From IMG/VR virus record IMGVR_UViG_3300005859_000281, positions 1 through 23,694 of that record: DNA of 23,694 bases; one strand, given 5' to 3'. Shown here one piece after another: positions 3,383 to 23,062 of the stretch. Position 1 is the first letter of the stretch; each line of letters begins with the position of its first letter. A model generated the notes under the pieces. It did no database searches, was not told the origin of the DNA, and saw only the letters and a list, made by a program, of their open reading frames with translations. The position numbers and the translations under genes were made by a program.

Positions 3383-3880
3383 CTATAGGGCATTCGTATT
3401 CTCCTTTTTCTCTCTTTTCTTCTTTATCGTTTTTGCGTCTATCGTCTCTATCCCCTCTTCTTCCAGATATTTTAGCACTGCGTCACTATCATCTATCACT
3501 GTTACCTTATCCTGATCGTATTTTTCCATGAGCTTCCTTATGGCATCCCTCTTAAACTCATGGTCTTTCCTGAAGTCCTTCTCGCCCCTCAGCACGACCT
3601 CGGTGGGCTCTATCCCTATCTCTGACAGCTGTTTGAGAGTATCTTCACGTTGTTTTTCCGAACGTCCGCTAACTACTGCTATCGCTTCTGGTTTTTTCTC
3701 TTCAATTAACTGTTGGACAAACGTGATAACTTCCCGTTTGGGCTTGTCCATGTTCATGAACCTCGGCGATTGGAAGCATTCCCAAAACATACGTTTATTT
3801 CCGTTGGCTAGCTTCTCGCATTCGTTCCACCTGGCAGAAATATCGAAAAGCGTGCCGTCCAAATCTAGGATTAACATCAC
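3383..3880 (-). CDS. HAD-superfamily phosphatase, polynucleotide kinase 3'-phosphatase-like
   Basis: Motif I DLDGTL, motif II SGR, R..D...K, motif IV IDDSD; layout like the T4 Pnkp phosphatase domain. Confidence 0.85.
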   Translation of the reverse strand: MMLILDLDGTLFDISARWNECEKLANGNKRMFWECFQSPRFMNMDKPKREVITFVQQLIEEKKPEAIAVVSGRSEKQREDTLKQLSEIGIEPTEVVLRGEKDFRKDHEFKRDAIRKLMEKYDQDKVTVIDDSDAVLKYLEEEGIETIDAKTIKKKREKKENTNAL

Positions 3881-5293: not shown

Positions 5294-5884
5294 ATGTCCA
5301 TGAAAATATCCCTGTTTAAGAAAAAAGCGTTGCCAAGCGTCTATAAGAATTACGACGCACTATTACTTTTGCCCCCAGCCACAGTCAAAACTGATAAAAA
5401 AACGAGTATAATAGAAAAAAACGGTGTGCATGTCGCTATAATGTATTCTGAAACCAACGGTATTTCTGTGATGTTGGATTTGCCCATTGATTTCTTAAAA
5501 CTATACTATAAGATGACTACACAAGTAAACCAGGGGAATCCGAGAGATAGGATGGTCTATTTTGCCATAGTTCACATTTCTTCGCAAGCATATGCAATAC
5601 AAAGAGCAAAAGTGCAAAAAATGAATGAGAGCACTAAAAGGAAGTTTTTCATTTTCCCCAGGTGGATTTGGCTCAGCCTAGAACGAAATGACGGTGTGAC
5701 GAATTATTTCGTCATAAACAGAATTGAAGACGATAATCCTGCAAACTTCTCAAAGGAATTTGATACATTCGGTGCCGTTGGGATTACCTTCAATAATTAC
5801 TTTATTTTCGCTAGTGTGGCGAGGAAGGAGTACGTAGCTTCCATAAATAAACAAATATCCCTCGGTCTGGGGTTTGGGTCATAA
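5294..5884 (+). CDS. Hypothetical protein (196 aa)
   Basis: ORF in a coupled operon (TAATG overlap with the next gene). Confidence 0.8.
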   Translation: MSMKISLFKKKALPSVYKNYDALLLLPPATVKTDKKTSIIEKNGVHVAIMYSETNGISVMLDLPIDFLKLYYKMTTQVNQGNPRDRMVYFAIVHISSQAYAIQRAKVQKMNESTKRKFFIFPRWIWLSLERNDGVTNYFVINRIEDDNPANFSKEFDTFGAVGITFNNYFIFASVARKEYVASINKQISLGLGFGS

Positions 5885-6402
5885 TGTCTCTCTCATATTT
5901 ACAATCGCTCGTTGGGAAAAACGTGGTATTATTCAACTATCTACGTAATATATTCAAAAATAGAATATACAAAATAGTTGAAAATGGGAATGAATATACT
6001 CTTGAGGTTGATATGGGGATAGCTAGCAGGTTACAGCACAGGATCACGCACCCCGGGATTTACTTTATCACAGACGTAATGATACAAGGTACTAGCTATG
6101 TAATTTTTCTAAAAAAACAAGTCGATCTAAAGAAGTTTGCACTGGTAAGCTCGACAACAACTTCTGAATATTACATTTCCTCGTACCGTAAAATACAGTA
6201 TAAAACCGATGCGGGTGTATTCGACGCTTTAGAATTCGATACGGGAGGGTTTAAGCACCTTACGTTTAACTATAATAACTGTATTATAGCGAAAGTGAAA
6301 AGGGCTGGTCATAAGCGTATTGCGGTATGCTTAGGTGATAGTGTCGTTATACAAGATATAAACAATGTTTCGTGCAGTTGTGAGTGGTTTACGGTTGAAT
6401 GA
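5884..6402 (+). CDS. Hypothetical beta-rich protein (172 aa)
   Basis: ORF with overlapping start/stop at both ends. Confidence 0.8.
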   Translation: MSLSYLQSLVGKNVVLFNYLRNIFKNRIYKIVENGNEYTLEVDMGIASRLQHRITHPGIYFITDVMIQGTSYVIFLKKQVDLKKFALVSSTTTSEYYISSYRKIQYKTDAGVFDALEFDTGGFKHLTFNYNNCIIAKVKRAGHKRIAVCLGDSVVIQDINNVSCSCEWFTVE

Positions 6403-7067: not shown

Positions 7068-7123
7068 AGCGACAAGGGTTTTCAGTTCCAAAAGAAATTT
7101 GCGGACGAAAGATAAAATAATAC

Positions 7124-7212
7124 AAACAGCTGTTTCAAGACTTTATCCTTCCCTTTATCGCCCTCCATCACGCTACTCATTGCCTAACTGGTTAGGCAGA
7201 AAGCTTAAAATA
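7124..7212 (+). promoter_or_regulatory. Two-box promoter module copy 4
   Basis: AAACAGCTGTTT 7124-7135; inverted repeat TGCCTAAC-TG-GTTAGGCA 7181-7198; TTAAAATA 7205-7212. Confidence 0.75.
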
Positions 7213-7283
7213 CTGATGTTTGGCATAAAAATGTACTGATCAAAAATGCCAAAAGTAAAAGTTAGGTTTGAGGGGTGTGGAAA

Positions 7284-8252
7284 ATGAGAATAGATATTAC
7301 AAAAAGTGGCGGTACTTCAATTTCGTTGTACCCGTTAGATGAATATCTCTCTTATGTTCTTTTTGATGACCTGTTTTTAAGACGAGACATTATACCTACC
7401 AAAGAACTATCAGACAAGCACGACGGATCGTTAACATTAGTTAACTATAAGCCTATGGCAACATTTAGTTTTGAGAACTCGCCAGGGTATATGCCATTTA
7501 TAATTGAAGTACGTGCTCAGTCTGAGGGAGATTCCACCTCCATCGAAAACCCAGCGGGCATAGAAGTGAGTTATGGAGAAAAAACTATACACCTCAATTT
7601 AGGTAATCTCAGCAGGGTAATTAAAGCATATGATTTTGAGATTTATAAGAGGACTGTCTATGTTAGTGTAATACAAGGTGCTACAGTTAAAGATTTTATT
7701 TTTGATGTGATCATACTAGCATACAGTGGAGGATCATACGGAGGAGCCATTGACACTGAGTTCACAAATAGGTGGGAATTCGCTGAGAAAAAAATAAAAC
7801 CATTAATTCAAACGTTAGAATCCGCTATTCCTACAATCCGAGAAGGTTTTAGGATCGAATATAAGTTTTACTATTCTCGCTATAGTGACATACTCCTATA
7901 CCCATACATTTTCCTCTTCCCTAAGGGAATTGTAAATGAAATCTCGGATTTCTTGTTATCTCTATATCAACAAACTTATGGCATCATTACAAAACTGCCA
8001 CCAGAATTTACACCTAACGAAAACGTACAATCCCCTGAGTTGCAAAAATTCCTTGAAAAGTTACCGCTCGATCTTATTGCAGAAGCGGTTATAGGCACAT
8101 ACGGTTCTTCTCCTGCGATACTTTTACCGAAAGGAGACTATTCTCAATACCTCACAGGCAATGAACGTATAATCAACCTCGAAAATAGTGATGTGATAGT
8201 CTTCGGTAATCCTCGAGCTCAAGAACAACAGACTCCCGCTCCTCAACAATAG
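7284..8252 (+). CDS. Hypothetical protein, probable member of a viral paralogous family (~320 aa)
   Basis: Long ORF; SD-like GAGGGGTG before ATG 7284 (alternative GTG 7275); C-terminus similar to ORF 2..124. Confidence 0.85.
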   Translation: MRIDITKSGGTSISLYPLDEYLSYVLFDDLFLRRDIIPTKELSDKHDGSLTLVNYKPMATFSFENSPGYMPFIIEVRAQSEGDSTSIENPAGIEVSYGEKTIHLNLGNLSRVIKAYDFEIYKRTVYVSVIQGATVKDFIFDVIILAYSGGSYGGAIDTEFTNRWEFAEKKIKPLIQTLESAIPTIREGFRIEYKFYYSRYSDILLYPYIFLFPKGIVNEISDFLLSLYQQTYGIITKLPPEFTPNENVQSPELQKFLEKLPLDLIAEAVIGTYGSSPAILLPKGDYSQYLTGNERIINLENSDVIVFGNPRAQEQQTPAPQQ

Positions 8253-8269
8253 AATGTAGGACAGAATAA

Positions 8270-9014
8270 GAAGGAGTTAAGGGCGGAAAGCCTCGCCATG
8301 GGATGGACAGCCCCTTATAGAAAGTTTCGATACCGCTTTGCTTTCTTTTTCTTTATAATTCTTTCATCTAAATAAATATTCTCATAGAAATGGCGAACTA
8401 TAATATAATCTCCTTCTTGTATCTTTTCCTTATATACTATATAAATTGATTTACTATGCTCTTCTGCTCTTATCTTATAAATTCTATAATTCATTAGGAA
8501 GAGAATAGGATTAAAGAATAAAATTTTGTTATTCTTAAATAATCCAAATATGAAGAATAAAACTATAATAAACACAATCAGTCCGATTAATGTGGCTGGA
8601 AAAACAGATAGTAACGCTAACACGTAAGTAGTCATTGTTATATTAGCGTAGTTTACACTCAGGTCTTCTATTCCAGTCACGTGATAAGTTCTCGGGCTTT
8701 CTTTGTCTTCCTCTGTCGTTATCAAGTAATAATAACCGTAATTCGAAATTATTAAAAGAGCTGATAGTATCATGTAGGGTATTAAAAGTAGGGGTATGCT
8801 AAAGGAATATATTCTAATATAAAATATAAAGAAATATTTAGAATAGGTAATCATTAGTATTATAAATACTAATGTATATTCGCTCAAGAACAATCGCAGT
8901 GAATTAAATATATGTGTACTCATGGACTGACTTACATTTATATTGTAATACAAACTAAATAAAACTTGTTTTATTGAGGGAACCAACGCCCTCCCTGGGC
9001 GAGAAGAAAGTCGG
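8270..9014 (+). mobile_element. Non-autonomous IS200/IS605-derived element carrying a passenger gene
   Basis: Left-end-like GAAGGAGTTAAGGGCGGAAAGCCTCGCC..GGATGGACAGCCCC (8270-8314) and right-end-like GGGAACCAACGCCC..GGGCGAGAAGAAAGTCGG (8978-9014) enclose one ORF; ends recognised from recalled Sulfolobales IS605-family termini. Confidence 0.6.
8315..8923 (-). CDS. Multi-pass membrane protein, KwaA (Kiwa)-like
   Basis: About 4 TM helices; TTYVLALL...FFNPILFLMNYRIYKI resembles the KwaA TY..P / NP.L...GY..Y pattern; very AT-rich; likely start ATG 8923. Confidence 0.55.
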   Translation of the reverse strand: MSTHIFNSLRLFLSEYTLVFIILMITYSKYFFIFYIRIYSFSIPLLLIPYMILSALLIISNYGYYYLITTEEDKESPRTYHVTGIEDLSVNYANITMTTYVLALLSVFPATLIGLIVFIIVLFFIFGLFKNNKILFFNPILFLMNYRIYKIRAEEHSKSIYIVYKEKIQEGDYIIVRHFYENIYLDERIIKKKKAKRYRNFL

Positions 9015-9096
9015 TTAGGTGCTCTTTAACAAACAATAAAGGAGAAATTAAACCACAAACAGAACCCTTATTAAATATTAAAACATATGTTTTTGC

Positions 9097-10455
9097 ATGG
9101 AACGTATCGAAGTAGAACTCGATGATCCTGAAATTTCAAAATATATTCAAAAATTAGGTGCAAATAACGTATATCTTGTTGGTGGCACTGTCAGGGACAT
9201 CCTGACTGGCAAGAAGCCTAAGGATTTAGATTTTGTAGTCACCGATTTCGATAAAGCGTTAAAGTTGGCAGAAGAGATGAACTTACCTATTCATGAAGAC
9301 GGCATAGATTTCGGAGTCCTTAGGATAGGAGATAAGTATGATTTTGCTTCATTGAGGAAGGAGCGATACGACACTGTTAGTAAACCTACCGTTGAGCTCG
9401 GTGCTTCTTTAGAAGAAGATGCGAGAAGGAGGGATTTTACAATTAATGACCTCTATGGCAAGATAGTAGGTATTCACGGAAATAAATTGGTAATGGAGAT
9501 CCTTGATTTCAACAACGGTTTGGAGGATCTACGTAATCATGTGTTAAGGTTTGTAGGAAACCCACAGGAGAGAATAGACGAGGATCCGCTTAGGATACTA
9601 AGGGGAATAAGGTTTAACCTTTACGGCTATAAAATGTCCCCAGACCAACTAGAAATAATGAAGAAGAACGTTGATAAGCTGGGTGGATTACCTATAGAGA
9701 GGATCAGTGATGAGATACTAAAAATACTAAAGGTTAACCCTGCGGAGGGGTTTAAACTACTCGACGAGTTCGGTCTATTAAAATATCTCTATGAAGAACA
9801 TTACGATGCATTAAAGAATACCTATCATGATAATAGGGGTGCACACCACGGCGAGAATGTTATAGAGCACACATATGAGACGTTAAAGAGGCTTAGACGC
9901 CCAGATATTGAAACGTTATTAGCAGTAATTTATCACGATGTAGGCAAACCTTATACTAGGAGCGAAAAAAACGGGAAGATAATGTTCATAGGTCATGCTA
10001 ACGAGAGTGCAGAAATTGCAAAGGAATTAATGAAGAACCTAAAGTTACCTAACAACCTGATAAAGGACGTTTCTAACCTAATAGAAATGCATATGGACTT
10101 TAATTTAGCACAGAATAACGAGAAGAACCAGGCACAATTAATTACTAAGTTAATGTCATTGTATTCTTGGAACCCTGAGAAAGCAAGAGAGATATATAAT
10201 AAACTAATAGAGCTATCTCACGCGGATACTGCAAGCGAGAATATACTTAACATGTCCGACAAGATAAAAGAGCCGATTGTAACTGGAGAAGAAATAATGA
10301 ATACTTTTGGTGTGAGCGGAAGCATATTGAAGCATTTGAAGGAGAGGGCATATACTCTACAACTCCAAGGATATGATAAAGGCGAGATACTGAAGACGTT
10401 GAAGGGTGATAACAAATTAAACGAGTTTAAGAAGGTGTTAGAAAATTGGAGCTGA
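9097..10455 (+). CDS. cca: Class II (bacterial-type) CCA tRNA nucleotidyltransferase / poly(A) polymerase family protein with HD domain
   Basis: GGTVRD..KDLDF (DxD), RKERY loop, RRDFTIN, EDPLRILRGIRF, ERISDE; HD domain EHT..YHDVGKP..GHA..HM..AD. Confidence 0.9.
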   Translation: MERIEVELDDPEISKYIQKLGANNVYLVGGTVRDILTGKKPKDLDFVVTDFDKALKLAEEMNLPIHEDGIDFGVLRIGDKYDFASLRKERYDTVSKPTVELGASLEEDARRRDFTINDLYGKIVGIHGNKLVMEILDFNNGLEDLRNHVLRFVGNPQERIDEDPLRILRGIRFNLYGYKMSPDQLEIMKKNVDKLGGLPIERISDEILKILKVNPAEGFKLLDEFGLLKYLYEEHYDALKNTYHDNRGAHHGENVIEHTYETLKRLRRPDIETLLAVIYHDVGKPYTRSEKNGKIMFIGHANESAEIAKELMKNLKLPNNLIKDVSNLIEMHMDFNLAQNNEKNQAQLITKLMSLYSWNPEKAREIYNKLIELSHADTASENILNMSDKIKEPIVTGEEIMNTFGVSGSILKHLKERAYTLQLQGYDKGEILKTLKGDNKLNEFKKVLENWS

Positions 10456-10511
10456 AAATCCTTAATAGGAAAGGTACCTCATTATTGAGGTTTCATGAAT
10501 TTGCACTCGAC

Positions 10512-11153
10512 CTATTGAGGGGTATTAGGGAGGGATGTTAGGGAGAGGAAATGAGGTATTCCAAAAGGGATACAAATATTACGTATTCCGTTGCATTCGC
10601 CTATATATGCATTTATCTCTTTATTCATATCGCAGTTCTCTTTTGAAAGCTTATGGAACACTCTTCCGTTTCCGTCTAAAATCCTGTATTTATTCCCCTC
10701 TTTAACCACAATTATCCGATCCTCTGCTAGCTTGCCCCTTCTCTTACCGTAATTCTCTCCATCTTCACAAAGTTTCCTCTTTATTTCTTCATTTTTCACG
10801 ATCTCTTCAATATTCTTGTATTTATACCCTGGAAAACCTTGTATTTCAGTTGAGATTATAAGATCCTTTAACTTAACGCTACCTTCTTCCCACGTACAAG
10901 ATTCGGCAGTTATTTCTTTTGCTATGAACTTCCTCTTAAACATTAAACTAAGCCCGTAAAATAAATCATAAATCTCCTTACAGTCCTCTTCTATTCCTTT
11001 CTTATGCTCACGGCACTTTTTGACTAGCCCATCTATATTAATTATATCAGGGGTTTTATCGCGAGTTAACGATGCTAATTCGTGCAATATATAACTTTTT
11101 ACAACCTCTAATCGCGACTCTTGAGTTAAATGCTCAGGATATTTTGTTATCAT
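10512..11153 (-). CDS. ParB/Sulfiredoxin-like domain protein
   Basis: IIVVKEGNKYRILDGNGRV resembles the ParB/Srx I.V....Y.I.DGxHR signature (H replaced by G). Confidence 0.55.
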   Translation of the reverse strand: MITKYPEHLTQESRLEVVKSYILHELASLTRDKTPDIINIDGLVKKCREHKKGIEEDCKEIYDLFYGLSLMFKRKFIAKEITAESCTWEEGSVKLKDLIISTEIQGFPGYKYKNIEEIVKNEEIKRKLCEDGENYGKRRGKLAEDRIIVVKEGNKYRILDGNGRVFHKLSKENCDMNKEINAYIGECNGIRNICIPFGIPHFLSLTSLPNTPQ

Positions 11154-11310
11154 ACATTACCTTTTTGATGTTTTTGTTTAAAAAGAAAAGGTGTTTATCC
11201 ATCAACAATAAACCTCAAACAGCTGTTTATGAGAGCGGAATAGGATCTGACTTGCTTGAGCTTGCCTTACCAACAGTCAGCTTTATTTGCCGTAGTTCTA
11301 AGGGTATAAT

Positions 11311-11652
11311 ATGATTACCCAAAAAGAAATGGTTTCGGCAATTTATAATTGTGTTAAGAAACGTGAAAAACATCTTATTGAGGAAAAGTCTTTCTTAATT
11401 TCCCTCTCTGTAGGAATCCCTGCAGACGACTTTTATGAAGTCGATGAACATCTTACTTATCGCGGTTTGGCAAACGATTACGTTGCTTACTGCGAAAATT
11501 ATTTGCCTATATTAGATAAATACGACAAGAAAACGATTTTAGAGGCTTCCCTGTACATGTTTAACCTAATAAGGAGAGGAGTGCGTGGTAAATTAAACGA
11601 AAAAGCCTCAAAATTGCTCTCGGAACTTAATCTATTCCAAGGCTATTCTTAA
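11311..11652 (+). CDS. Hypothetical protein (113 aa)
   Basis: ORF with TTTATTT ~30 nt upstream and a T-rich tract downstream. Confidence 0.75.
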   Translation: MITQKEMVSAIYNCVKKREKHLIEEKSFLISLSVGIPADDFYEVDEHLTYRGLANDYVAYCENYLPILDKYDKKTILEASLYMFNLIRRGVRGKLNEKASKLLSELNLFQGYS

Positions 11653-11710
11653 TTTCTTTAATAACCTCTTCTTTCTTTCTTCAATTTACTGTTCCCAATG
11701 ACGAAACGAA

Positions 11711-11878
11711 CGGCAAGCCTCGTCTCAGTCCTTAACGAGGTTTTAATTTAGTACTGACGAAACTAGAAGAAGGAGAGAAAAAGAGGGAAAAAGTACGAAA
11801 TGCTATATAGGAGAAAAAGTACGAAATAAGGGAAAAAAGATAACGGTAATTCGAACTGAACTGCGGGGAGGAGGTTAG
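11711..11878 (+). mobile_element. Degenerate IS200/IS605-end remnant
   Basis: CGGCAAGCCTCGTC..CAGTCCTTA (left-end-like, 11711-11734) and GCGGGGAGGAGGTTAG (right-end-like, 11863-11878). Confidence 0.45.
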
Positions 11879-16106: not shown

Positions 16107-18467
16107 ATGCAAAGCTTCTTTCATGATAACGAAGATGATGAGAGACAACTGACTGAACTAACAAACACTATTTTTGAAACAGTGGTAAATGAACTTGGAC
16201 ATTTGTCTGATTATCTTTCACTTACACCAGACGTTATGGATAGTTTAAGAGATACTGTATATAAACTTGTCAAGATAGCATCGCAACAAAACAAACTTCT
16301 TTTGCAATTCCCAGCAGTCCTCGCTTATTTCGTTTATAATTTTTTAAAAAATATCGATTTAGATAGGATAAAAGACATAAACGAAAAATTAGACAATATT
16401 CAGCGTCTGATACAACGTAAAAACTTGCAGGGTTTATCATTCAGCACTATCAAACAGCTGTTACAACAAGAATTGCAGGAGAAAAAATTCAGACGCAACA
16501 GACCCAATAAAGCAGAAAAACAAAAAGAAGAGCAGAAACAAAGCGGAAAAGAAGAAAAACAACAAGAACAGCAGAAGCAAGGTGGAAAAAGATCCAACAA
16601 AGTAGAAAAACAACAACAAGAAGGAGAAAAACAAGAAGAGGGAAAAGAAGGGCAGGAAAGTGAAAGCGAAGAGAGCCAAGGACAACAAGGACAGGAATCG
16701 GGAGAAGAAAGCCAGGAGGGTAACGAGCAGGAAAGCGGTGAGGAACAGGGGCAACAAGAAGGTGGAGAAGGAAACCAAGGAGAAGAAACACAACAAGAAG
16801 GACAAGAAGGAGGACAGCAAAGTGAAAGCGAAGGCAACCAAGAGGAGGGAGAAGAAGGGGAGTCACAAGAAGGTGGAGAAGGAGAACAGGGAAACGGAGA
16901 AGAGGGCGAGGAACGGGGAAACGAAAACCAAGGGGAACACGGACAGGAATCAGGAGGAGAAGAAGGGCAACAAAGCAAAAACGAAGGAGAACAGCAAAGT
17001 GGAGAAGAAGGAAACGAAGGAGAACGTGGCAATGCCCAAGAAGGACAGGAATCAGAAGGTGAAAGCGGGAATGAAGAAAGTCAAAGTGGAGAAGAAGGTG
17101 GAGAACAACAACAAGGGCAGGAATCAGAAGTGGAAAGTGAAAACGAAGGAAACGAAGGTCAAAATAGTGAGGGACAAGAAGGTCAAAACGGTGAACAAGG
17201 AGGAGGACAGGGAAACGAAAACGAAGAGAATCAAAGCGGAGAAGAAAGCGGAGAAGGTCAAAATGGCGAACAAGGAGAAGGAAGCGGAATGAACCAGGAG
17301 GGTAACGAGCAGGAAAATGAGGGACAAAGCGGAAATGAAGGGAATGAGGGAGAACAACAAGGAGAAGGGAGTCAAAGTGGAGAAGAAGGTGAGGGACAGG
17401 AATCAGGAGAAGGGCAGGAAAGTGAAAGCGAGGGGAGCCAAAATGGGGAAGGAGAAACCCAAGAAGGTGAAGGAGGAGGACAGCAAAGTGGAGAAGAAGG
17501 CAACCAAGGTCAAAGTGGAGAAGAAGGAGGACAGGAATCAGGAGGAGAAGAAGGGCAACAAAGTGAAAACGAAGATATTATAGAAGACCTCGAAAATAAC
17601 ATAGATGAAGAATCAAAGATTTTAGACGGATTGCAAGAAAGCCTTCAAGAGTCCTTAACAGCTTTATCTATTGGGAAAGGCTCAGGAGGAGGAGTATTAA
17701 AGGATATCAATCCTAGAGTTTTAGAATTATTAGAGAGTGCTAACAGGCTTTTGGCTTTGGCTAACCAAGTTGATTTACAGTACGCTAACAGAGGCGTTAA
17801 AGATCAGGGAGGGGTGATGAGGGGGATAACAACTGGAAATAATGTCAAACATATGTTTAAGAGTCAACTAGTTTTACCGGATGAGATTTTCCTCGAACGG
17901 TATACTAACAGAGCCTTACTGCAAAGGGCGGTAGAAAATGAGGGCGTTGGGGACTTATATTTCATGATAGATAAAAGCGGGTCTATGGGGAATTTTATGC
18001 CGAACGGGTATACTGCGTTTGAAAATGTTTCGGCTGTAGCCTTAGCTTCTGCTATGGAGGCAGAAAAGAACAGTAAGAAGGTGTTTGTACAATACTTCGA
18101 TTCTTCGTCAACCGAGCCTATAGATGTTAACAACGTTTTCGAAGTAGCTCAGACCCAACCCGGAGGAGGAACGGACATGATGGTTGCATTACAAGACTTC
18201 ATGGAATATTATAATAACTATCCCGGGTTAAAGGACGTAAGACAGATCTTCATACTATCTGATTTTGAGACGAACTATGATACTACGCTTTATTATTTCA
18301 AGAACTTTGCAAGAAATAATGGCTTAGTAGTTACGTGCATACATGTATATAATGATGAAGTGCCTGCTCGTATGCAAACCATAATAGACGAAATCTGTGA
18401 TGAATATTATAAATTTAATAATTATGATGCAGGCGAATTATTTTCAGCCGTGTATTCAAAGATTTAG
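16107..18467 (+). CDS. VWA-domain co-chaperone with long E/G/Q-rich linker (ATV p892-like)
   Basis: MIDAS DKSGS...GGGT...ILSD at the C-terminus; directly downstream of the MoxR ATPase. Confidence 0.9.
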   Translation: MQSFFHDNEDDERQLTELTNTIFETVVNELGHLSDYLSLTPDVMDSLRDTVYKLVKIASQQNKLLLQFPAVLAYFVYNFLKNIDLDRIKDINEKLDNIQRLIQRKNLQGLSFSTIKQLLQQELQEKKFRRNRPNKAEKQKEEQKQSGKEEKQQEQQKQGGKRSNKVEKQQQEGEKQEEGKEGQESESEESQGQQGQESGEESQEGNEQESGEEQGQQEGGEGNQGEETQQEGQEGGQQSESEGNQEEGEEGESQEGGEGEQGNGEEGEERGNENQGEHGQESGGEEGQQSKNEGEQQSGEEGNEGERGNAQEGQESEGESGNEESQSGEEGGEQQQGQESEVESENEGNEGQNSEGQEGQNGEQGGGQGNENEENQSGEESGEGQNGEQGEGSGMNQEGNEQENEGQSGNEGNEGEQQGEGSQSGEEGEGQESGEGQESESEGSQNGEGETQEGEGGGQQSGEEGNQGQSGEEGGQESGGEEGQQSENEDIIEDLENNIDEESKILDGLQESLQESLTALSIGKGSGGGVLKDINPRVLELLESANRLLALANQVDLQYANRGVKDQGGVMRGITTGNNVKHMFKSQLVLPDEIFLERYTNRALLQRAVENEGVGDLYFMIDKSGSMGNFMPNGYTAFENVSAVALASAMEAEKNSKKVFVQYFDSSSTEPIDVNNVFEVAQTQPGGGTDMMVALQDFMEYYNNYPGLKDVRQIFILSDFETNYDTTLYYFKNFARNNGLVVTCIHVYNDEVPARMQTIIDEICDEYYKFNNYDAGELFSAVYSKI
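16500..17575 (+). repeat. Intragenic purine-rich imperfect repeats encoding GQESGEE/GEQQ units
   Basis: For example a 35-bp exact repeat at 16941-16975 and 17529-17563. Confidence 0.85.
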
Positions 18468-20865: not shown

Positions 20866-20949
20866 AAGGGGGATCGAGGTTGCTCTGAAAAGCAGGAAAT
20901 CCTCACCGCGAGGTGGGGATGCCCCGTCCGTAAGGACGGGATAGTTCAT
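20866..20949 (+). mobile_element. IS200/IS605 remnant with right-end hairpins
   Basis: Hairpins ATCCTCACC-GCGA-GGTGGGGAT and CCCGTCC-GTAA-GGACGGG followed by TAGTTCA. Confidence 0.65.
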
Positions 20950-21896
20950 GCATTACCCAATACCTCAGGGAAAGTAGGTATACCGTCCTTCACGTATTTT
21001 ATCATCATATCCGCTACATCCCACCACATGTATTTAGGTCTTATAGGTACCTCACTAACGTCGCAAGTCATGCCTTCGGCGTCGAGGGGTCTATATAAAT
21101 CCGGGTCTATCTCATAAGTACCACCTACTTTCTCCATTACGTACTTCAAAAAGTCTTCCACACTCGCTATAACACCAGTGCAGAGGATATACCTTTTCGG
21201 CTCCTCTCCTTCCATAACTTTATTGAATATCTTCACATATTCTCCCGCGTATCCCCAATCTTTTTCAGCCTTGATATTACCTAATTTCACATGCTCCTTT
21301 TCCACTAAGTTCTTAACTATTTTCATGGTCACAAACTCTTCGCCCCTCAACTCGCTCTCGTGATTAAACGTTACAAAATCATAAACCTTAAGCCCCCATA
21401 CTTTACGGTAATAAGTAGCGATATACATTAATGAAACTTTACTTATTGCGTAAGGTGTAACGGGAGCCAGCGGTGTAGAAAGGGTTTGAGGGCGTTCCAA
21501 CGGGTGACCGAATACCTCACTCGAAGCAGGTAAAAATACTTTAGTCTCAGGCGTATGTTTCCTAACAGCCTCCAATATAGCATAAGCCGAAAGCTCGTTC
21601 ACCTGAGCCGTATAGATGGGGTTATTATAGCTATACGGAACGAAGCTCATAGCACCATAATGATATATCATGTCGGGCTTTAGCTCACGTACTATGTCGA
21701 AGACGTTTTCATATTCTGTAAGGTCAGCATAGACAAATTTAGGAGATACACCAAGAATTTCAATGACAGTCCGCATCTGGTTAGTCAACCCGTCTGCTCT
21801 ATGCCTGGTTAATACATATAACTCATCTCCCTTCTTTATATGAAGGAAGGTAGAAAGACTTGAGTCCTGACCCGCACCTGTAATTAAAACCTTCAT
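20946..21896 (-). CDS. gmd: GDP-mannose 4,6-dehydratase
   Basis: ITGAGQD, ASSEVFG, YAISK (YxxxK), FNHES.LRGEEFVT.KI, LGN...KDWG, YRP. Confidence 0.9.
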   Translation of the reverse strand: MKVLITGAGQDSSLSTFLHIKKGDELYVLTRHRADGLTNQMRTVIEILGVSPKFVYADLTEYENVFDIVRELKPDMIYHYGAMSFVPYSYNNPIYTAQVNELSAYAILEAVRKHTPETKVFLPASSEVFGHPLERPQTLSTPLAPVTPYAISKVSLMYIATYYRKVWGLKVYDFVTFNHESELRGEEFVTMKIVKNLVEKEHVKLGNIKAEKDWGYAGEYVKIFNKVMEGEEPKRYILCTGVIASVEDFLKYVMEKVGGTYEIDPDLYRPLDAEGMTCDVSEVPIRPKYMWWDVADMMIKYVKDGIPTFPEVLGNA

Positions 21897-21973
21897 AAGA
21901 TCATCTTCATGTAAAGATATATAAGCCTTGAGTTAAGAGTACTCTCTACTCTAGAGTACCCAAAAAATTATAA

Positions 21974-22033
21974 ATTTAGGGGTTCCAAGGGGGCGTAAGA
22001 TTCCGACTGACCAATTCTAGGGGAGGAAGCCAG
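21974..22033 (+). mobile_element. Mini IS200/IS605-derived element (fused left and right ends, ~60 bp)
   Basis: TATAA then ATTTAGGGGTTCCAAGGGGGCGTAAG...GGGGAGGAAGCCAG. Confidence 0.6.
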
Positions 22034-22042
22034 CTAAATAAC

Positions 22043-22583: not shown

Positions 22584-22615
22584 TTAAAAATCGTTATAAT
22601 ATCAAGAATCTATTG

Positions 22616-23062
22616 ATGTCGAGATTCTTGGTGTCAAGATTGCTGAAATTTGCCGTGGTCGGGGGGCTAGGCACGTTCGTGAATGAACTAGTATTTTTAT
22701 CTACTACTAAGCTTTTATCCATATCGATATCATTAGCATTAGCAATAGAGCTTTCAATAATATTTAATTTTATACTAAATGATATTTGGACTTTTAAGGA
22801 TAAAAGAGTAGGAAGTTTTATTAAGAGACTACTTAAATTTCATATGTCGTCAGCTAGTGGAGGAATTATTCAGTATATTGTGGTAATTTCCATTATTGTA
22901 ATCATGTTTCATTTTAGTAATGCTTCGGAAATAGTGGCAATATTGTTTTTTACGTCTTATTTAAAACTTCAGTCTTTAGTACTTGGCATAATCAATTTCA
23001 TAGGAATAATTTCTGGGTTCATCGTAAGATTTATAACAAGTATAAAGTTGGTATGGACGTGA
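22616..23062 (+). CDS. gtrA: GtrA-family protein (putative lipid-linked sugar flippase)
   Basis: KFAVVGGLGTFVN...SIIFNFILNDIWTFKD; four TM helices. Confidence 0.88.
   Translation: MSRFLVSRLLKFAVVGGLGTFVNELVFLSTTKLLSISISLALAIELSIIFNFILNDIWTFKDKRVGSFIKRLLKFHMSSASGGIIQYIVVISIIVIMFHFSNASEIVAILFFTSYLKLQSLVLGIINFIGIISGFIVRFITSIKLVWT

What the first reader, a model, noticed from the sequence alone, without database searches (positions are those of the whole stretch)
9097..10455. Bacterial-type class II CCA-adding/HD enzyme in an archaeal virus context
Seen: complete class II nucleotidyltransferase motifs (DxD, RRD, EDxxR, flexible loop) plus an intact HD domain. Known: archaea normally use class I CCA enzymes, and the HD domain of E. 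coli Cca removes 2',3'-cyclic and other terminal phosphates. Inference: the virus may repair tRNA 3' ends damaged by host RNases (toxins, CRISPR type III ancillary nucleases) or tag RNAs. Its promoter carries the AAACATATGTTT site (9081), suggesting integration into the viral regulon.
Basis: partly seen in the sequence, partly recalled or inferred. Interest (0 to 1): 0.75.

Follow-up and report, generated by a model that had tools for sequence, protein, structure and literature searches.

The report
Bacterial-type tRNA CCA enzyme in archaeal virus
A hot-spring archaeal spindle virus carries an intact, selectively maintained bacterial-type tRNA tail-building (CCA-adding) enzyme fused to a phosphate-removing HD domain, most likely to mend host tRNA 3' ends, but a 90% identical gene is already annotated in a published relative (Acidianus tailed spindle virus), so it is a new member of a known kind.

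Summary
ORF 9097-10455 (+) encodes a 452-aa class II (Pol-beta) tRNA nucleotidyltransferase with every catalytic motif plus an HDIG-type HD domain. Its AlphaFold model (pLDDT 94.8) matches only class II CCA/A/CC-adding enzymes and poly(A) polymerase. Published sequence criteria favour CCA-adding: no PAP signature, flexible loop present, ERxxxExxxhh present.

The window is an IMG/VR contig of a Sulfolobus monocaudavirus SMV4-like virus. The gene is a single-gene cassette in a variable locus and recurs at that locus in five independent assemblies. It also occurs in Acidianus tailed spindle virus (gp83, 90% aa, already annotated) and in a third, unrelated 33-kb contig. dN/dS is 0.09-0.24, so it is neither a chimera nor decaying.

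No archaeal genome among 185,579 species carries a close relative. The 80 best cellular relatives are all bacterial (26-35% identity). The nearest sister lineages sit on other hot-spring contigs with archaeal-type genes.

The most likely role is tRNA 3'-end healing and CCA rebuilding. The counter-defence purpose is inferred only. The AAACATATGTTT palindrome is real and over-represented, but what it regulates is unknown.

Verdict: new member of a known kind, moderate interest.

The parts
9097..10455 (+). Gene for a 452-aa class II tRNA nucleotidyltransferase fused to an HD phosphohydrolase. It is the orthologue of ATSV gp83.
   Evidence: ORF listing. Pfam, NCBIfam and PHROG hits. 90% aa identity to ATSV gp83. 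dN/dS 0.09-0.24. AF2 pLDDT 94.8, with all 46 significant PDB fold hits being class II enzymes.
9169..9549 (+). Catalytic head domain (residues 25-151). It holds motif A (G29-D45, nt 9181-9231), the B/A element plus flexible loop (R87 to about T101, nt 9355-9399), motif B RRDFTIN (nt 9427-9447) and motif C.
   Evidence: PF01743 over 1-126 of 126 profile positions. Invariant columns G29 G30 R33 D45 R87 D108 R111 R112 D113 N117 D144. The loop block has pLDDT 70.
9580..9801 (+). Neck region. It holds motif D EDPLR (E162-R166, nt 9580-9594), motif E (R169/R172/F173), the PolyA_pol_RNAbd domain (residues 177-235) and the CCA-type ERxxxExxxhh motif (E201-L211, nt 9697-9729).
   Evidence: PF12627. Regex test with E. 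coli PcnB and Cca as controls. Criterion taken from PMC10673834.
9862..10227 (+). HD / HDIG phosphohydrolase domain (residues 256-377), with ligands H258, H280-D281, H300, H332 and D377.
   Evidence: PF01966 42.7 bits. TIGR00277 HDIG above its cutoff. The ligand columns are invariant or nearly so, and align to E. coli Cca.
10264..10452 (+). C-terminal helical tail (about residues 390-452). It aligns with the C-terminal region of bacterial HD-containing CCA enzymes.
   Evidence: Alignment consensus P..G....G..G....L.LQL shared with bacterial relatives, many of which carry PF13735. The model is confidently helical here.
9040..9096 (+). Cassette-borne promoter. It has a TATA-like box (about 9067-9079), then the 14-nt palindrome AAAACATATGTTTT (9080-9093, core 9081-9092), then the ATG 4 nt later. 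The transcript is probably leaderless.
   Evidence: Sequence. Similarity between contigs starts at about 9040, and the palindrome is exact in the window, L004 and L005 but degenerate in L006 and ATSV. Site statistics.
7068..11874 (.). Variable accessory locus that interrupts collinearity with SMV4, which has only 0.84 kb here. It holds the CCA gene and four ORFs of unknown function: 7275-8252 (+), 8315-8986 (-), 10512-11153 (-) and 11311-11652 (+).
   Evidence: blastn of the window against SMV4. Comparison with L004-L007. No Pfam hits for the neighbours. PHROG hits are to families of unknown function only.
3383..3880 (-). Stand-alone HAD-family polynucleotide 3'-phosphatase, i.e. the phosphatase half of T4 Pnkp. 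It has the DxDxT motif (DLDGT) and no kinase domain. It is a possible partner in RNA end healing, but it belongs to the SMV backbone.
   Evidence: PF25109 HAD_PNKP 43.8 bits. phrog_505 positions 163-288 of 295 only. 80% identity to ATSV gp80. Also present in SMV3, SMV4, YNP1 and YNP2, which lack the CCA gene.

Best explanation
The gene encodes a working two-activity tRNA 3'-end enzyme of the bacterial (class II) kind.

Proposed mechanism:
- The N-terminal Pol-beta head and neck add C, C and A without a template to tRNAs whose 3' tail is missing or shortened.
- The C-terminal HD domain first removes a blocking 2',3'-cyclic, 3'- or 2'-phosphate. Such ends are left by metal-independent RNases or by heat and acid damage, and cannot be extended until the phosphate is gone.

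How the virus carries it: as an optional single-gene cassette with its own short promoter. The cassette has moved between large spindle viruses of Sulfolobales (SMV-like viruses, ATSV, and one other element).

Why it would help: the host makes CCA tails with an unrelated class I enzyme, which as far as is known has no phosphoesterase domain. The viral enzyme would therefore add an end-healing step and extra CCA capacity. That keeps host tRNAs chargeable during infection, plausibly in the face of tRNA-tail-damaging host nucleases. The backbone HAD 3'-phosphatase may help.

Shown: gene integrity, family, fold, motif set, purifying selection, mobility, and absence from archaeal genomes.
Inferred: substrate (tRNA), CCA specificity, HD activity, and the counter-defence purpose.
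For: Family and fold:
- Domain architecture and all catalytic motifs are present.
- The protein matches phage tRNA nucleotidyltransferase family phrog_2244 over its full length (274 bits).
- The AF2 model (pLDDT 94.8) hits only class II CCA-, CC- and A-adding enzymes and PAP in the PDB.

CCA-adding versus other class II activities:
- The criteria used for M. tuberculosis Rv3907c are all met: PAP signature absent, flexible loop present, ERxxxExxxhh present. Rv3907c has the same three-domain layout, was also first annotated as a PAP, and was then shown to be CCA-adding with an HD-dependent phosphohydrolase (PMC10673834).
- In the tree the clade sits among HD-bearing CCA-type enzymes, not with PcnB.

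Maintenance and spread:
- dN/dS is 0.09-0.24 across six copies.
- The gene is kept at the same locus in five assemblies and is present in two further genomic contexts.
- Its GC content (38.3%) equals that of the window (38.2%), so it is not a recent import.

No viral substrate: there are no tRNA genes or Rfam RNAs in the window or related loci, so the substrate must be host RNA.

Possible partner: a PNKP-type HAD 3'-phosphatase is encoded in the same genomes.

Literature context:
- tRNA CCA-tail cleavage is a demonstrated immune strategy, for which viral counter-measures are 'yet unknown' (PMC12851939).
- Phage CCA enzymes are read as RNA repair (PMC7824862).
- Sulfolobus genomes carry HEPN/minimal-nucleotidyltransferase pairs (supplement of PMC11065993).
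Against: - There is no biochemical or expression data for any member of this viral clade.
- The protein scores far below every NCBIfam equivalog cutoff (best 171 against 438.8). Specificity therefore cannot be transferred by curated rule.
- The loop is one residue shorter than the bacterial consensus (S-KP instead of SRKP).
- SMV1-4 lack the gene, so it is dispensable.
- The host already has a CCA enzyme.
- No RNA ligase or 5'-kinase is present in the window.
- The HAD phosphatase does not co-vary with the gene.
- The one characterised Sulfolobus ancillary RNase, SisCsx1, cuts C-C poorly at RNA ends (PMC6754442).
- A nuclease that also removes the discriminator base could not be reversed by CCA addition alone.
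Confidence: 0.55

Rival explanations
1. It is a poly(A) or oligonucleotide tailing polymerase. It would mark host or viral RNAs, for example for exosome decay, rather than act on tRNA.
For: The best PDB sequence hit is E. coli poly(A) polymerase I (5e-25). GenBank calls the ATSV orthologue 'poly-A polymerase'. Class II PAP and CCA catalytic cores are very similar, and TIGR01942 pcnB scores 121 bits.
Against: The PAP-specific signature between motif A and the loop is absent, while the PcnB control has it. The CCA-type ERxxxExxxhh motif is present. PAPs lack the HD domain (PMC10673834). TIGR01942 scores well below its cutoff (121 against 305.65). PcnB lies on a long separate branch. Foldseek ranks CCA enzymes first.
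Confidence: 0.1
2. It is a CCA-adding enzyme used simply to boost or replace host tRNA maturation. Sulfolobales tRNA genes mostly lack an encoded CCA, and spindle-virus infection remodels the cell. On this reading there is no link to defence, and the HD domain is a housekeeping accessory, as in bacteria.
For: The enzymology evidence is the same as for the best explanation. No defence or anti-defence gene is recognisably linked in the window. The gene was not among the anti-defence candidates listed for SMV or ATSV genomes by promoter motif (supplement search of PMC11065993).
Against: It is an optional cassette, absent from SMV1-4, which is unusual for a general replication need. The host class I enzyme is essential and already present (textbook knowledge). 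This reading does not explain retention of all HD ligands under purifying selection.
Confidence: 0.2
3. The HD domain is the business end. It would hydrolyse small nucleotides or second messengers (2',3'-cyclic nucleotides, oligoadenylate products), and the transferase part would serve only as an RNA or nucleotide-binding scaffold.
For: The E. coli Cca HD domain hydrolyses free 2',3'-cNMPs and nucleotides (Yakunin 2004, cited). Hosts of these viruses use cA4 signalling, and SMV4 carries the AcrIII-1 ring nuclease (supplement of PMC11065993).
Against: Every transferase catalytic residue is invariant across the viral clade and its sisters. dN/dS is uniformly low. No HD-only derivative was seen. 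The one truncated relative, P0100, keeps the transferase part and has only a weak HD hit.
Confidence: 0.05
4. It is a passenger. The gene is a recently captured bacterial or phage gene with no role in the archaeal virus, or it is an assembly artefact.
For: All cellular relatives are bacterial. The gene lies in a hypervariable locus.
Against: The same junctions occur in five assemblies from different samples, and the gene is also in the complete ATSV genome. GC and GC3 match the virus. dN/dS is 0.09-0.24 with dS up to 0.96. The clade has diverged down to 52% identity and has sister lineages on contigs with archaeal-type genes.
Confidence: 0.03

Closest known systems
Acidianus tailed spindle virus gp83 (YP_009230336.1; NC_029316 56835-58187)
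   Same: Orthologue: 90% aa and 91% nt identity, including about 40 bp of promoter. Same length (450 against 452 aa) and the same three domains.
   Different: The genome backbone and neighbours differ. The palindrome upstream is degenerate (AAACGTTTGTTT). ATSV has a 93-nt duplicate of the promoter plus 5' coding sequence, 645 nt upstream. It has not been functionally studied, as far as the library searches found.
Actinobacterial CCA-adding enzyme with HDIG domain (TIGR02692; M. tuberculosis Rv3907c)
   Same: Best NCBIfam match (171 bits). Same arrangement: class II head, RNA-binding domain, HDIG. The loop is similar (Y.xxS(R)KP.V). Rv3907c was shown to add CCA and to have HD-dependent phosphohydrolase activity, after first being mis-annotated as a PAP (PMC10673834).
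   Different: Only about 32-35% identity. The score is far under the equivalog cutoff of 438.8. Rv3907c is a housekeeping chromosomal gene of bacteria. The viral clade has a roughly 9-residue insertion between motifs B and C.
E. coli multifunctional Cca (NF008137) and the CCA enzymes of gamma-proteobacterial phages
   Same: Same domain logic (transferase plus HD). The HD metal ligands align one to one. This is the biochemical precedent for 2',3'-cyclic phosphodiesterase and phosphatase activity.
   Different: 25% identity. They form a separate, long-branched clade. The loop sequence is different and the N-terminus shorter. The score is 103 bits against a cutoff of 451.
Bacteriophage tRNA nucleotidyltransferases (phrog_2244)
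   Same: Virus-borne accessory CCA/HD enzymes. The profile match is full length (274 bits, residues 24-449). They are interpreted in the literature as part of RNA repair against host tRNA attack (PMC7824862).
   Different: Their hosts natively use class II enzymes. They often sit with phage tRNA genes, RNA ligases and kinases. Here there are no tRNAs, no ligase and no kinase. Identity is 25-30%.
E. coli poly(A) polymerase I (PcnB)
   Same: Same class II catalytic core. It is the top PDB sequence hit (3aqm).
   Different: The PAP signature LVGRRFRLAHV-type motif is absent from the viral protein, which instead has the ERxxxExxxhh motif and an HD domain that PcnB lacks.
Archaeal class I CCA-adding enzyme (the host's own)
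   Same: Presumed same overall reaction on tRNA.
   Different: It belongs to an unrelated branch of the Pol-beta superfamily. No class I Pfam domain is detected in the viral protein. As far as textbook knowledge goes, it has no fused HD phosphoesterase.

Membership tests
Class II nucleotidyltransferases (tRNA CCA/CC/A-adding enzymes and bacterial PAP; Pfam PF01743 + PF12627) | Motif A: GGxVRD ... DxD catalytic carboxylates | tested here: met
   G29 G30 T V32 R33 D34 ... D43 L D45. G29, G30, R33 and D45 are invariant and D43 is at least 90% conserved.
Class II nucleotidyltransferases (tRNA CCA/CC/A-adding enzymes and bacterial PAP; Pfam PF01743 + PF12627) | Motifs B (RRD), C (D...G..DL), D (EDxxR) and E (R..RF) | tested here: met
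   R111 R112 D113; D137 / G141 / D144 L145; E162 D163 P L R166; R169 / R172 F173. These columns are invariant or nearly so.
Class II nucleotidyltransferases (tRNA CCA/CC/A-adding enzymes and bacterial PAP; Pfam PF01743 + PF12627) | Pfam gathering thresholds and the overall head-neck-body fold | tested here: met
   PF01743 scores 73 bits (cutoff 23) and PF12627 scores 41.7 (cutoff 22). AF2 pLDDT is 94.8. All 46 PDB hits with E<=1e-3 are class II enzymes, with TM up to 0.74.
CCA-adding subtype (versus PAP, CC-adding, A-adding) | Absence of the PAP-specific signature between motif A and the loop | tested here: met
   The regex [LIV][LIV]G[RK][RK]F.[LIV].[HQL][LIV] (pattern recalled from memory) hits the E. 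coli PcnB control. It does not hit the window protein, ATSV gp83 or any of the ten other proteins checked individually. The criterion itself is named in PMC10673834.
CCA-adding subtype (versus PAP, CC-adding, A-adding) | B/A element plus a flexible loop (deleted in CC-adding enzymes) | tested here: met
   R87-K-E89 is followed by YDTVSKPTVE. The loop is within one residue of the length in actinobacterial CCA enzymes in the alignment. It is also the least confident internal block of the model. Loop presence does not prove A-addition.
CCA-adding subtype (versus PAP, CC-adding, A-adding) | ERxxxExxxhh motif (A-adding enzymes have a different first residue) | tested here: met
   E201 R I S D E206 I L K I L. 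E201 and E206 are invariant. E. coli Cca is positive and PcnB negative.
CCA-adding subtype (versus PAP, CC-adding, A-adding) | Score above a curated equivalog cutoff (NCBIfam) | tested here: not met
   The best is TIGR02692 at 171 bits against a cutoff of 438.8. All other CCA equivalogs are also far below their cutoffs. The protein is therefore a divergent lineage, not a member of any curated equivalog.
CCA-adding subtype (versus PAP, CC-adding, A-adding) | Template-independent addition of exactly C-C-A to tRNA | not testable with these tools
   Needs an enzyme assay.
Multifunctional Cca with HD phosphohydrolase (E. coli / actinobacterial type) | HD domain with the full H...HD...H...H...D ligand set | tested here: met
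   H258, H280-D281, H300, H332 and D377. PF01966 scores 42.7 bits, and TIGR00277 HDIG 33.9 bits against a cutoff of 27.6.
Multifunctional Cca with HD phosphohydrolase (E. coli / actinobacterial type) | 2',3'-cyclic phosphodiesterase / phosphatase activity on RNA ends | not testable with these tools
   Known for E. coli Cca and, with pNPP as substrate, for M. tuberculosis CCA. Untested here.
Bacterial poly(A) polymerase I (TIGR01942 / NF008634) | Score above the curated cutoff, plus the PAP signature | tested here: not met
   121 bits against 305.65, and 91.6 against 702. The signature is absent.
Archaeal class I CCA-adding enzyme | Class I nucleotidyltransferase domains | tested here: not met
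   No class I domain appears among the Pfam hits at E<=0.01. All fold hits are class II.
T4-type RNA repair set (Pnkp + RNA ligase) | 5'-kinase and RNA ligase encoded alongside the healing phosphatase | tested here: not met
   Only the HAD phosphatase half is present. No kinase or ligase domain was found in any scanned window ORF.

The most novel reading that the evidence does not exclude
A distinct lineage of class II CCA/HD enzymes has radiated on mobile elements of thermophilic archaea. It comprises this clade plus sister groups on contigs carrying STIV-B116-like, PCNA, L7Ae, Cren7 and Prim-Pol genes. On this reading it serves as the first known viral counter-measure to immune or toxin nucleases that clip or block tRNA 3' tails, for example the HEPN partners of the HEPN/MNT pairs abundant in Sulfolobales. 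It would supply the phosphate-removal step that the host's class I enzyme lacks.
Probability: 0.2. Interest if true: 0.75.

Novelty: new member of a known kind. Interest (0 to 1): 0.4.

Why it matters
Archaea build tRNA CCA tails with class I enzymes. A selectively maintained, mobile class II enzyme with a healing HD domain in Sulfolobales viruses is therefore a clear case of cross-domain gene flow fixed in a virus gene pool.

tRNA-tail cleavage has recently been shown to be an immune strategy in bacteria, and no viral answer to it is known (PMC12851939). These thermostable viral enzymes are cheap, testable candidates for such an answer in a genetically tractable archaeal system.

If the enzyme is only a maturation booster, the finding is ordinary auxiliary-gene biology. 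Either way, the RefSeq label 'polynucleotide kinase' for the neighbouring HAD gene and the GenBank label 'poly-A polymerase' for ATSV gp83 look inaccurate.

Tried and rejected
- Viral tRNA substrates: ARAGORN found no tRNA or tmRNA gene in the window or in six related loci. Rfam found nothing at gathering thresholds. Maturation of virus-encoded tRNAs is therefore rejected.
- Co-variation of the HAD 'polynucleotide kinase' gene with the CCA gene was tested. SMV3, SMV4, YNP1 and YNP2 have the HAD gene without the CCA gene. It is not a dedicated two-gene module.
- Neighbouring ORFs of the variable locus: no Pfam hit, and PHROG families of unknown function only.
- Palindrome versus the published early/anti-defence promoter motif of SMVs (PMC11065993): the SMV4 candidates listed there (gp61, gp40, gp02) are not the genes that carry the palindrome, and no ATSV gene is listed. 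No support.
- SisCsx1 as the nuclease being countered: its C-C preference fits, but its poor activity near RNA ends and its need for at least 12 nt argue against it.
- The ATSV description paper (PMC4794678) is not held. Searches for ATSV together with nucleotidyltransferase returned nothing.
- Classifying the distant sister contigs (L008, L009, L010) by DNA or protein similarity to known viruses gave essentially nothing. Their archaeal mobile-element nature rests only on Pfam marks.
It was rerun without them.
Full report
WHAT IS THERE

ORF 9097..10455 on the + strand starts with ATG and encodes 452 aa. Pfam finds three domains:
- the class II 'PolyA_pol' head, residues 25-151, covering the full profile (73 bits)
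- PolyA_pol_RNAbd, residues 177-235
- HD, residues 256-377

NCBIfam's HDIG domain model passes its cutoff. Every full-length equivalog model falls far short: actinobacterial CCA scores 171 bits against 438.8, E. coli Cca 103 against 451, and PcnB 121 against 305.65. The phage family phrog_2244 'tRNA nucleotidyltransferase' matches end to end (274 bits).

All signature motifs are present. In alignments of 54-61 relatives they fall in invariant or nearly invariant columns:
- GGxVRD...DxD: G29-D45
- R87-x-E89 plus the loop
- RRDFTIN: 111-117
- D137 / G141 / D144
- EDPLR: 162-166
- R169 / R172 F173
- HD ligands H258, H280-D281, H300, H332, D377, which align one to one with E. coli Cca

An AlphaFold2 model built on 54 sequences has mean pLDDT 94.8. 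Its only soft internal block is residues 91-100, the flexible loop. Foldseek against the PDB returns 46 significant hits. All are class II CCA-, CC- or A-adding enzymes or E. coli PAP, with TM up to 0.74.

WHERE IT SITS

The window is the entire IMG/VR contig IMGVR_UViG_3300005859_000281. Its backbone is collinear with Sulfolobus monocaudavirus SMV4, and also matches SMV3 and SMV1 at 81-88% nucleotide identity. It includes the MoxR-type ATPase/VWA pair typical of these viruses.

Collinearity breaks between 7068 and 11874. SMV4 has 0.84 kb there, and the window has 4.8 kb with five ORFs, the CCA gene among them.

Only the stretch 9057-10457 has another match in the phage/archaeal-virus collection. 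That match is Acidianus tailed spindle virus gp83, at 91% nt and 90% aa. It is annotated 'poly-A polymerase' in GenBank and 'tRNA nucleotidyltransferase' in RefSeq.

Four further metagenomic contigs (L004-L007), from other samples, carry the gene at the same SMV-type locus with partly different neighbours. Sequence similarity between them begins about 55 bp upstream of the ATG. A 33-kb contig (L008, GC 29%) carries an 80%-identical copy in an otherwise unrelated context.

The gene is therefore a mobile single-gene cassette with its own promoter, not an assembly chimera. Pairwise dN/dS among six copies is 0.09-0.24, with dS up to 0.96. The gene's GC (38.3%) equals that of the window (38.2%). 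It is maintained by selection and is long resident.

RELATIVES

In the 5.8-billion-protein collection there are about 24 clusters at 52-93% identity, all from metagenome collections (JGI, ENA; one also in Logan). Identity then drops to 40% and below.

A single-protein scan of one genome per species (185,579 bacterial and archaeal species) found no close relative. A profile scan returned only Bacteria among the best 80, at 26-35% identity: Streptomyces and other Actinomycetota, Cloacimonadota, Verrucomicrobiota, CPR and others. It is not a common Sulfolobales chromosomal gene, and 'bacterial-type' is justified.

In a maximum-likelihood tree (114 rows, SH-aLRT support):
- The viral clade has 100% support.
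- It is sister (96%) to P0025/P0026/P0028.
- Together these are sister (98%) to a group that includes P0027 and P0100.
- E. coli Cca with gamma-proteobacterial phage enzymes forms a separate long-branched clade.
- PcnB is the outgroup.

The sister sequences lie on ORFan-rich contigs that carry archaeal-type marks:
- STIV-B116-like and VWA genes (L009)
- PCNA and L7Ae (L010, L011)
- RHH, resolvase and Prim-Pol (L020)
- Cren7, L7Ae and RIO1 (L022, an NCBI MAG)

A profile search of 1.84 billion representatives shows roughly 25 clusters above about 380 bits before the generic bacterial plateau. The class II/HD gene thus seems to have a history on archaeal mobile elements that is older than this one virus group. 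I could not classify those contigs further.

WHICH ACTIVITY

Class II enzymes with different specificities share the catalytic core, so family membership alone does not give the product. I applied the sequence criteria used for M. tuberculosis Rv3907c. That protein has the same three-domain layout, was first annotated as a PAP, and was then shown to be the CCA-adding enzyme with an HD-dependent phosphohydrolase (PMC10673834). Three criteria were checked:
- The PAP-specific signature between motif A and the loop is absent. The E. coli PcnB control has it.
- The B/A element and flexible loop are present. CC-adding enzymes lack the loop.
- The ERxxxExxxhh motif, which separates CCA-adding from A-adding enzymes, is present (E201-L211). 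It is found in E. coli Cca and not in PcnB.

PAPs also lack the HD domain. CCA addition is therefore the best-supported activity, although it is untested. The clade falls below all curated equivalog cutoffs, and its loop is one residue shorter than the bacterial consensus.

LIKELY MECHANISM AND PURPOSE

[quoted passage not shown] In M. tuberculosis the HD domain is read as clearing cyclic phosphates from tRNA 3' ends.

The window and related loci encode no tRNA and no Rfam RNA, so the substrate should be host tRNA. The host's own CCA enzyme is class I and, to my knowledge, has no phosphoesterase domain.

The simplest model has two steps. The HD domain heals blocked 3' ends, and the transferase then rebuilds CCA, keeping tRNAs chargeable during infection.

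A stand-alone HAD 3'-phosphatase is encoded at 3383-3880 (-) and also in ATSV. It corresponds to the phosphatase half of T4 Pnkp, has the DLDGT motif and has no kinase domain. It could assist. However, it is a backbone gene also present in SMV3, SMV4 and YNP1/2, which lack the CCA gene. No kinase or ligase is present.

The purpose is inference. Three points from the literature bear on it:
- Phage CCA enzymes are interpreted as RNA repair against host attack (PMC7824862).
- Cleavage of tRNA CCA tails is now a demonstrated bacterial immune mechanism. Its authors note that viral resistance mechanisms are unknown, and they cite the HEPN-MNT toxin work as another case of tail cleavage (PMC12851939).
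- Sulfolobus genomes carry HEPN/minimal-nucleotidyltransferase pairs (supplement of PMC11065993).

But it cuts such bonds poorly near RNA termini and needs at least 12 nt of single strand (PMC5737841 and PMC6754442).

The cassette is optional, being absent from SMV1-4. That pattern fits an accessory, conflict-type gene, but also a mere fitness booster.

THE PROMOTER SITE

AAACATATGTTT (9081-9092; the 14-nt palindrome spans 9080-9093) lies between a TATA-like box and the ATG four bases downstream. This covers the expected start of a leaderless transcript, which is the usual place for an archaeal repressor (inference).

The window has 4 exact and 4 one-mismatch copies, against 0.2 expected. SMV4 has exact copies at places that, by collinearity, correspond to the window's other three exact sites. 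One of them has the same TATA-palindrome-ATG layout in front of the large transmembrane protein gene (window 23125; SMV4 gp18).

Upstream of the CCA gene the site is exact in the window, L004 and L005. It is degenerate in L006 and in ATSV. In SMV-type genomes the cassette therefore shares a cis element with backbone genes.

Which factor binds the site, and when, is unknown. The genes carrying it are not among the early/anti-defence candidates that Bhoobalan-Chitty et al. list for SMV4.

COMPARISON WITH WHAT IS KNOWN, AND NOVELTY

The protein is a member of the class II nucleotidyltransferase superfamily, with all defining sequence and fold features met. It has the Cca-type HD fusion. It does not belong to any curated equivalog and is not a PAP by signature.

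It is an orthologue of an already deposited and annotated ATSV gene, so the finding is a new member of a known kind. Three things go beyond the database record:
- evidence that the gene is a mobile cassette under purifying selection in at least three element types
- evidence that it belongs to a lineage confined, so far, to hot-spring metagenomic contigs, several carrying archaeal-type genes, with only bacterial cellular relatives
- sequence criteria favouring CCA addition over polyadenylation

No functional study of any archaeal-virus homologue was found in the searchable library.

Interest is moderate at 0.4. The cross-domain enzyme class is a modest surprise, and the counter-defence idea is timely and directly testable, but it is unproven.

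Noticed in passing
window 3383-3880 (-): The gene labelled 'polynucleotide kinase' in RefSeq for its SMV3, SMV4 and ATSV orthologues is only the HAD 3'-phosphatase half of Pnkp. It hits PF25109 and phrog_505 positions 163-288 of 295, has a DLDGT motif and has no P-loop kinase. The GenBank ATSV record calls it 'phosphatase'.
   Followed up: yes
window 4505, 9081, 17847, 23125 (exact); 3785, 6738, 12346, 19422 (one mismatch): The palindrome AAACATATGTTT is about 40-fold over-represented. Three exact copies are conserved at orthologous SMV4 positions. Two copies (9081, 23125) sit between a TATA-like box and an ATG. The binding factor is unknown.
   Followed up: partly
L001 (ATSV) 5356-5448 and 6001-6093: There is a 93-nt direct repeat (86% identical) of the CCA promoter plus the first ~54 nt of its coding sequence. 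It flanks the oppositely oriented gp82. It looks like a recombination or insertion scar.
   Followed up: partly
L010 9484-9870 (-), L011 22-408 (-), L022 7602-9140 (+): In two different sister lineages of the enzyme (P0026 and P0100), an L7Ae-domain (kink-turn RNA-binding) gene lies directly next to the class II/HD gene. This may be a functional link to structured RNAs.
   Followed up: no
L103 6990-7991 and 8001-9377; 16181-17377: In another member of the extended clade (P0126), an AbiEii-family nucleotidyltransferase gene ends 10 nt before the CCA/HD gene. AbiEii is a toxin-type family related to enzymes that modify tRNA ends. A weak T4 Rnl1-like ligase hit lies 7 kb downstream.
   Followed up: no
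window 16500-17500 (inside ORF 16107-18467): Composition is extreme here: GC 0.48, GC skew 0.50 and AT skew 0.82. There is internally repetitive similarity to SMV4 gp23. This is a purine-rich repeat region in the VWA-containing protein that follows the MoxR ATPase.
   Followed up: no
window 20866-22036 and 22613-23062: This is a second insertion relative to SMV4. It carries a GDP-mannose 4,6-dehydratase/epimerase-like gene (20946-21896, -; 208 bits). Next to it is a GtrA-like membrane protein gene. The pair suggests virus-encoded glycan modification.
   Followed up: no
window 7275-8252 (+): This 325-aa ORF matches only positions 4-310 of the 746-position family phrog_20664. It may be a truncated gene at the edge of the variable locus.
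   Followed up: no
window 10512-11153 (-): This 213-aa ORF lies immediately downstream of the CCA gene on the opposite strand. It has no family hit. It contains an 'ILDGNGR' stretch reminiscent of ParB/sulfiredoxin-fold motifs (my recollection, untested). It is missing or partial in L004-L007.
   Followed up: no
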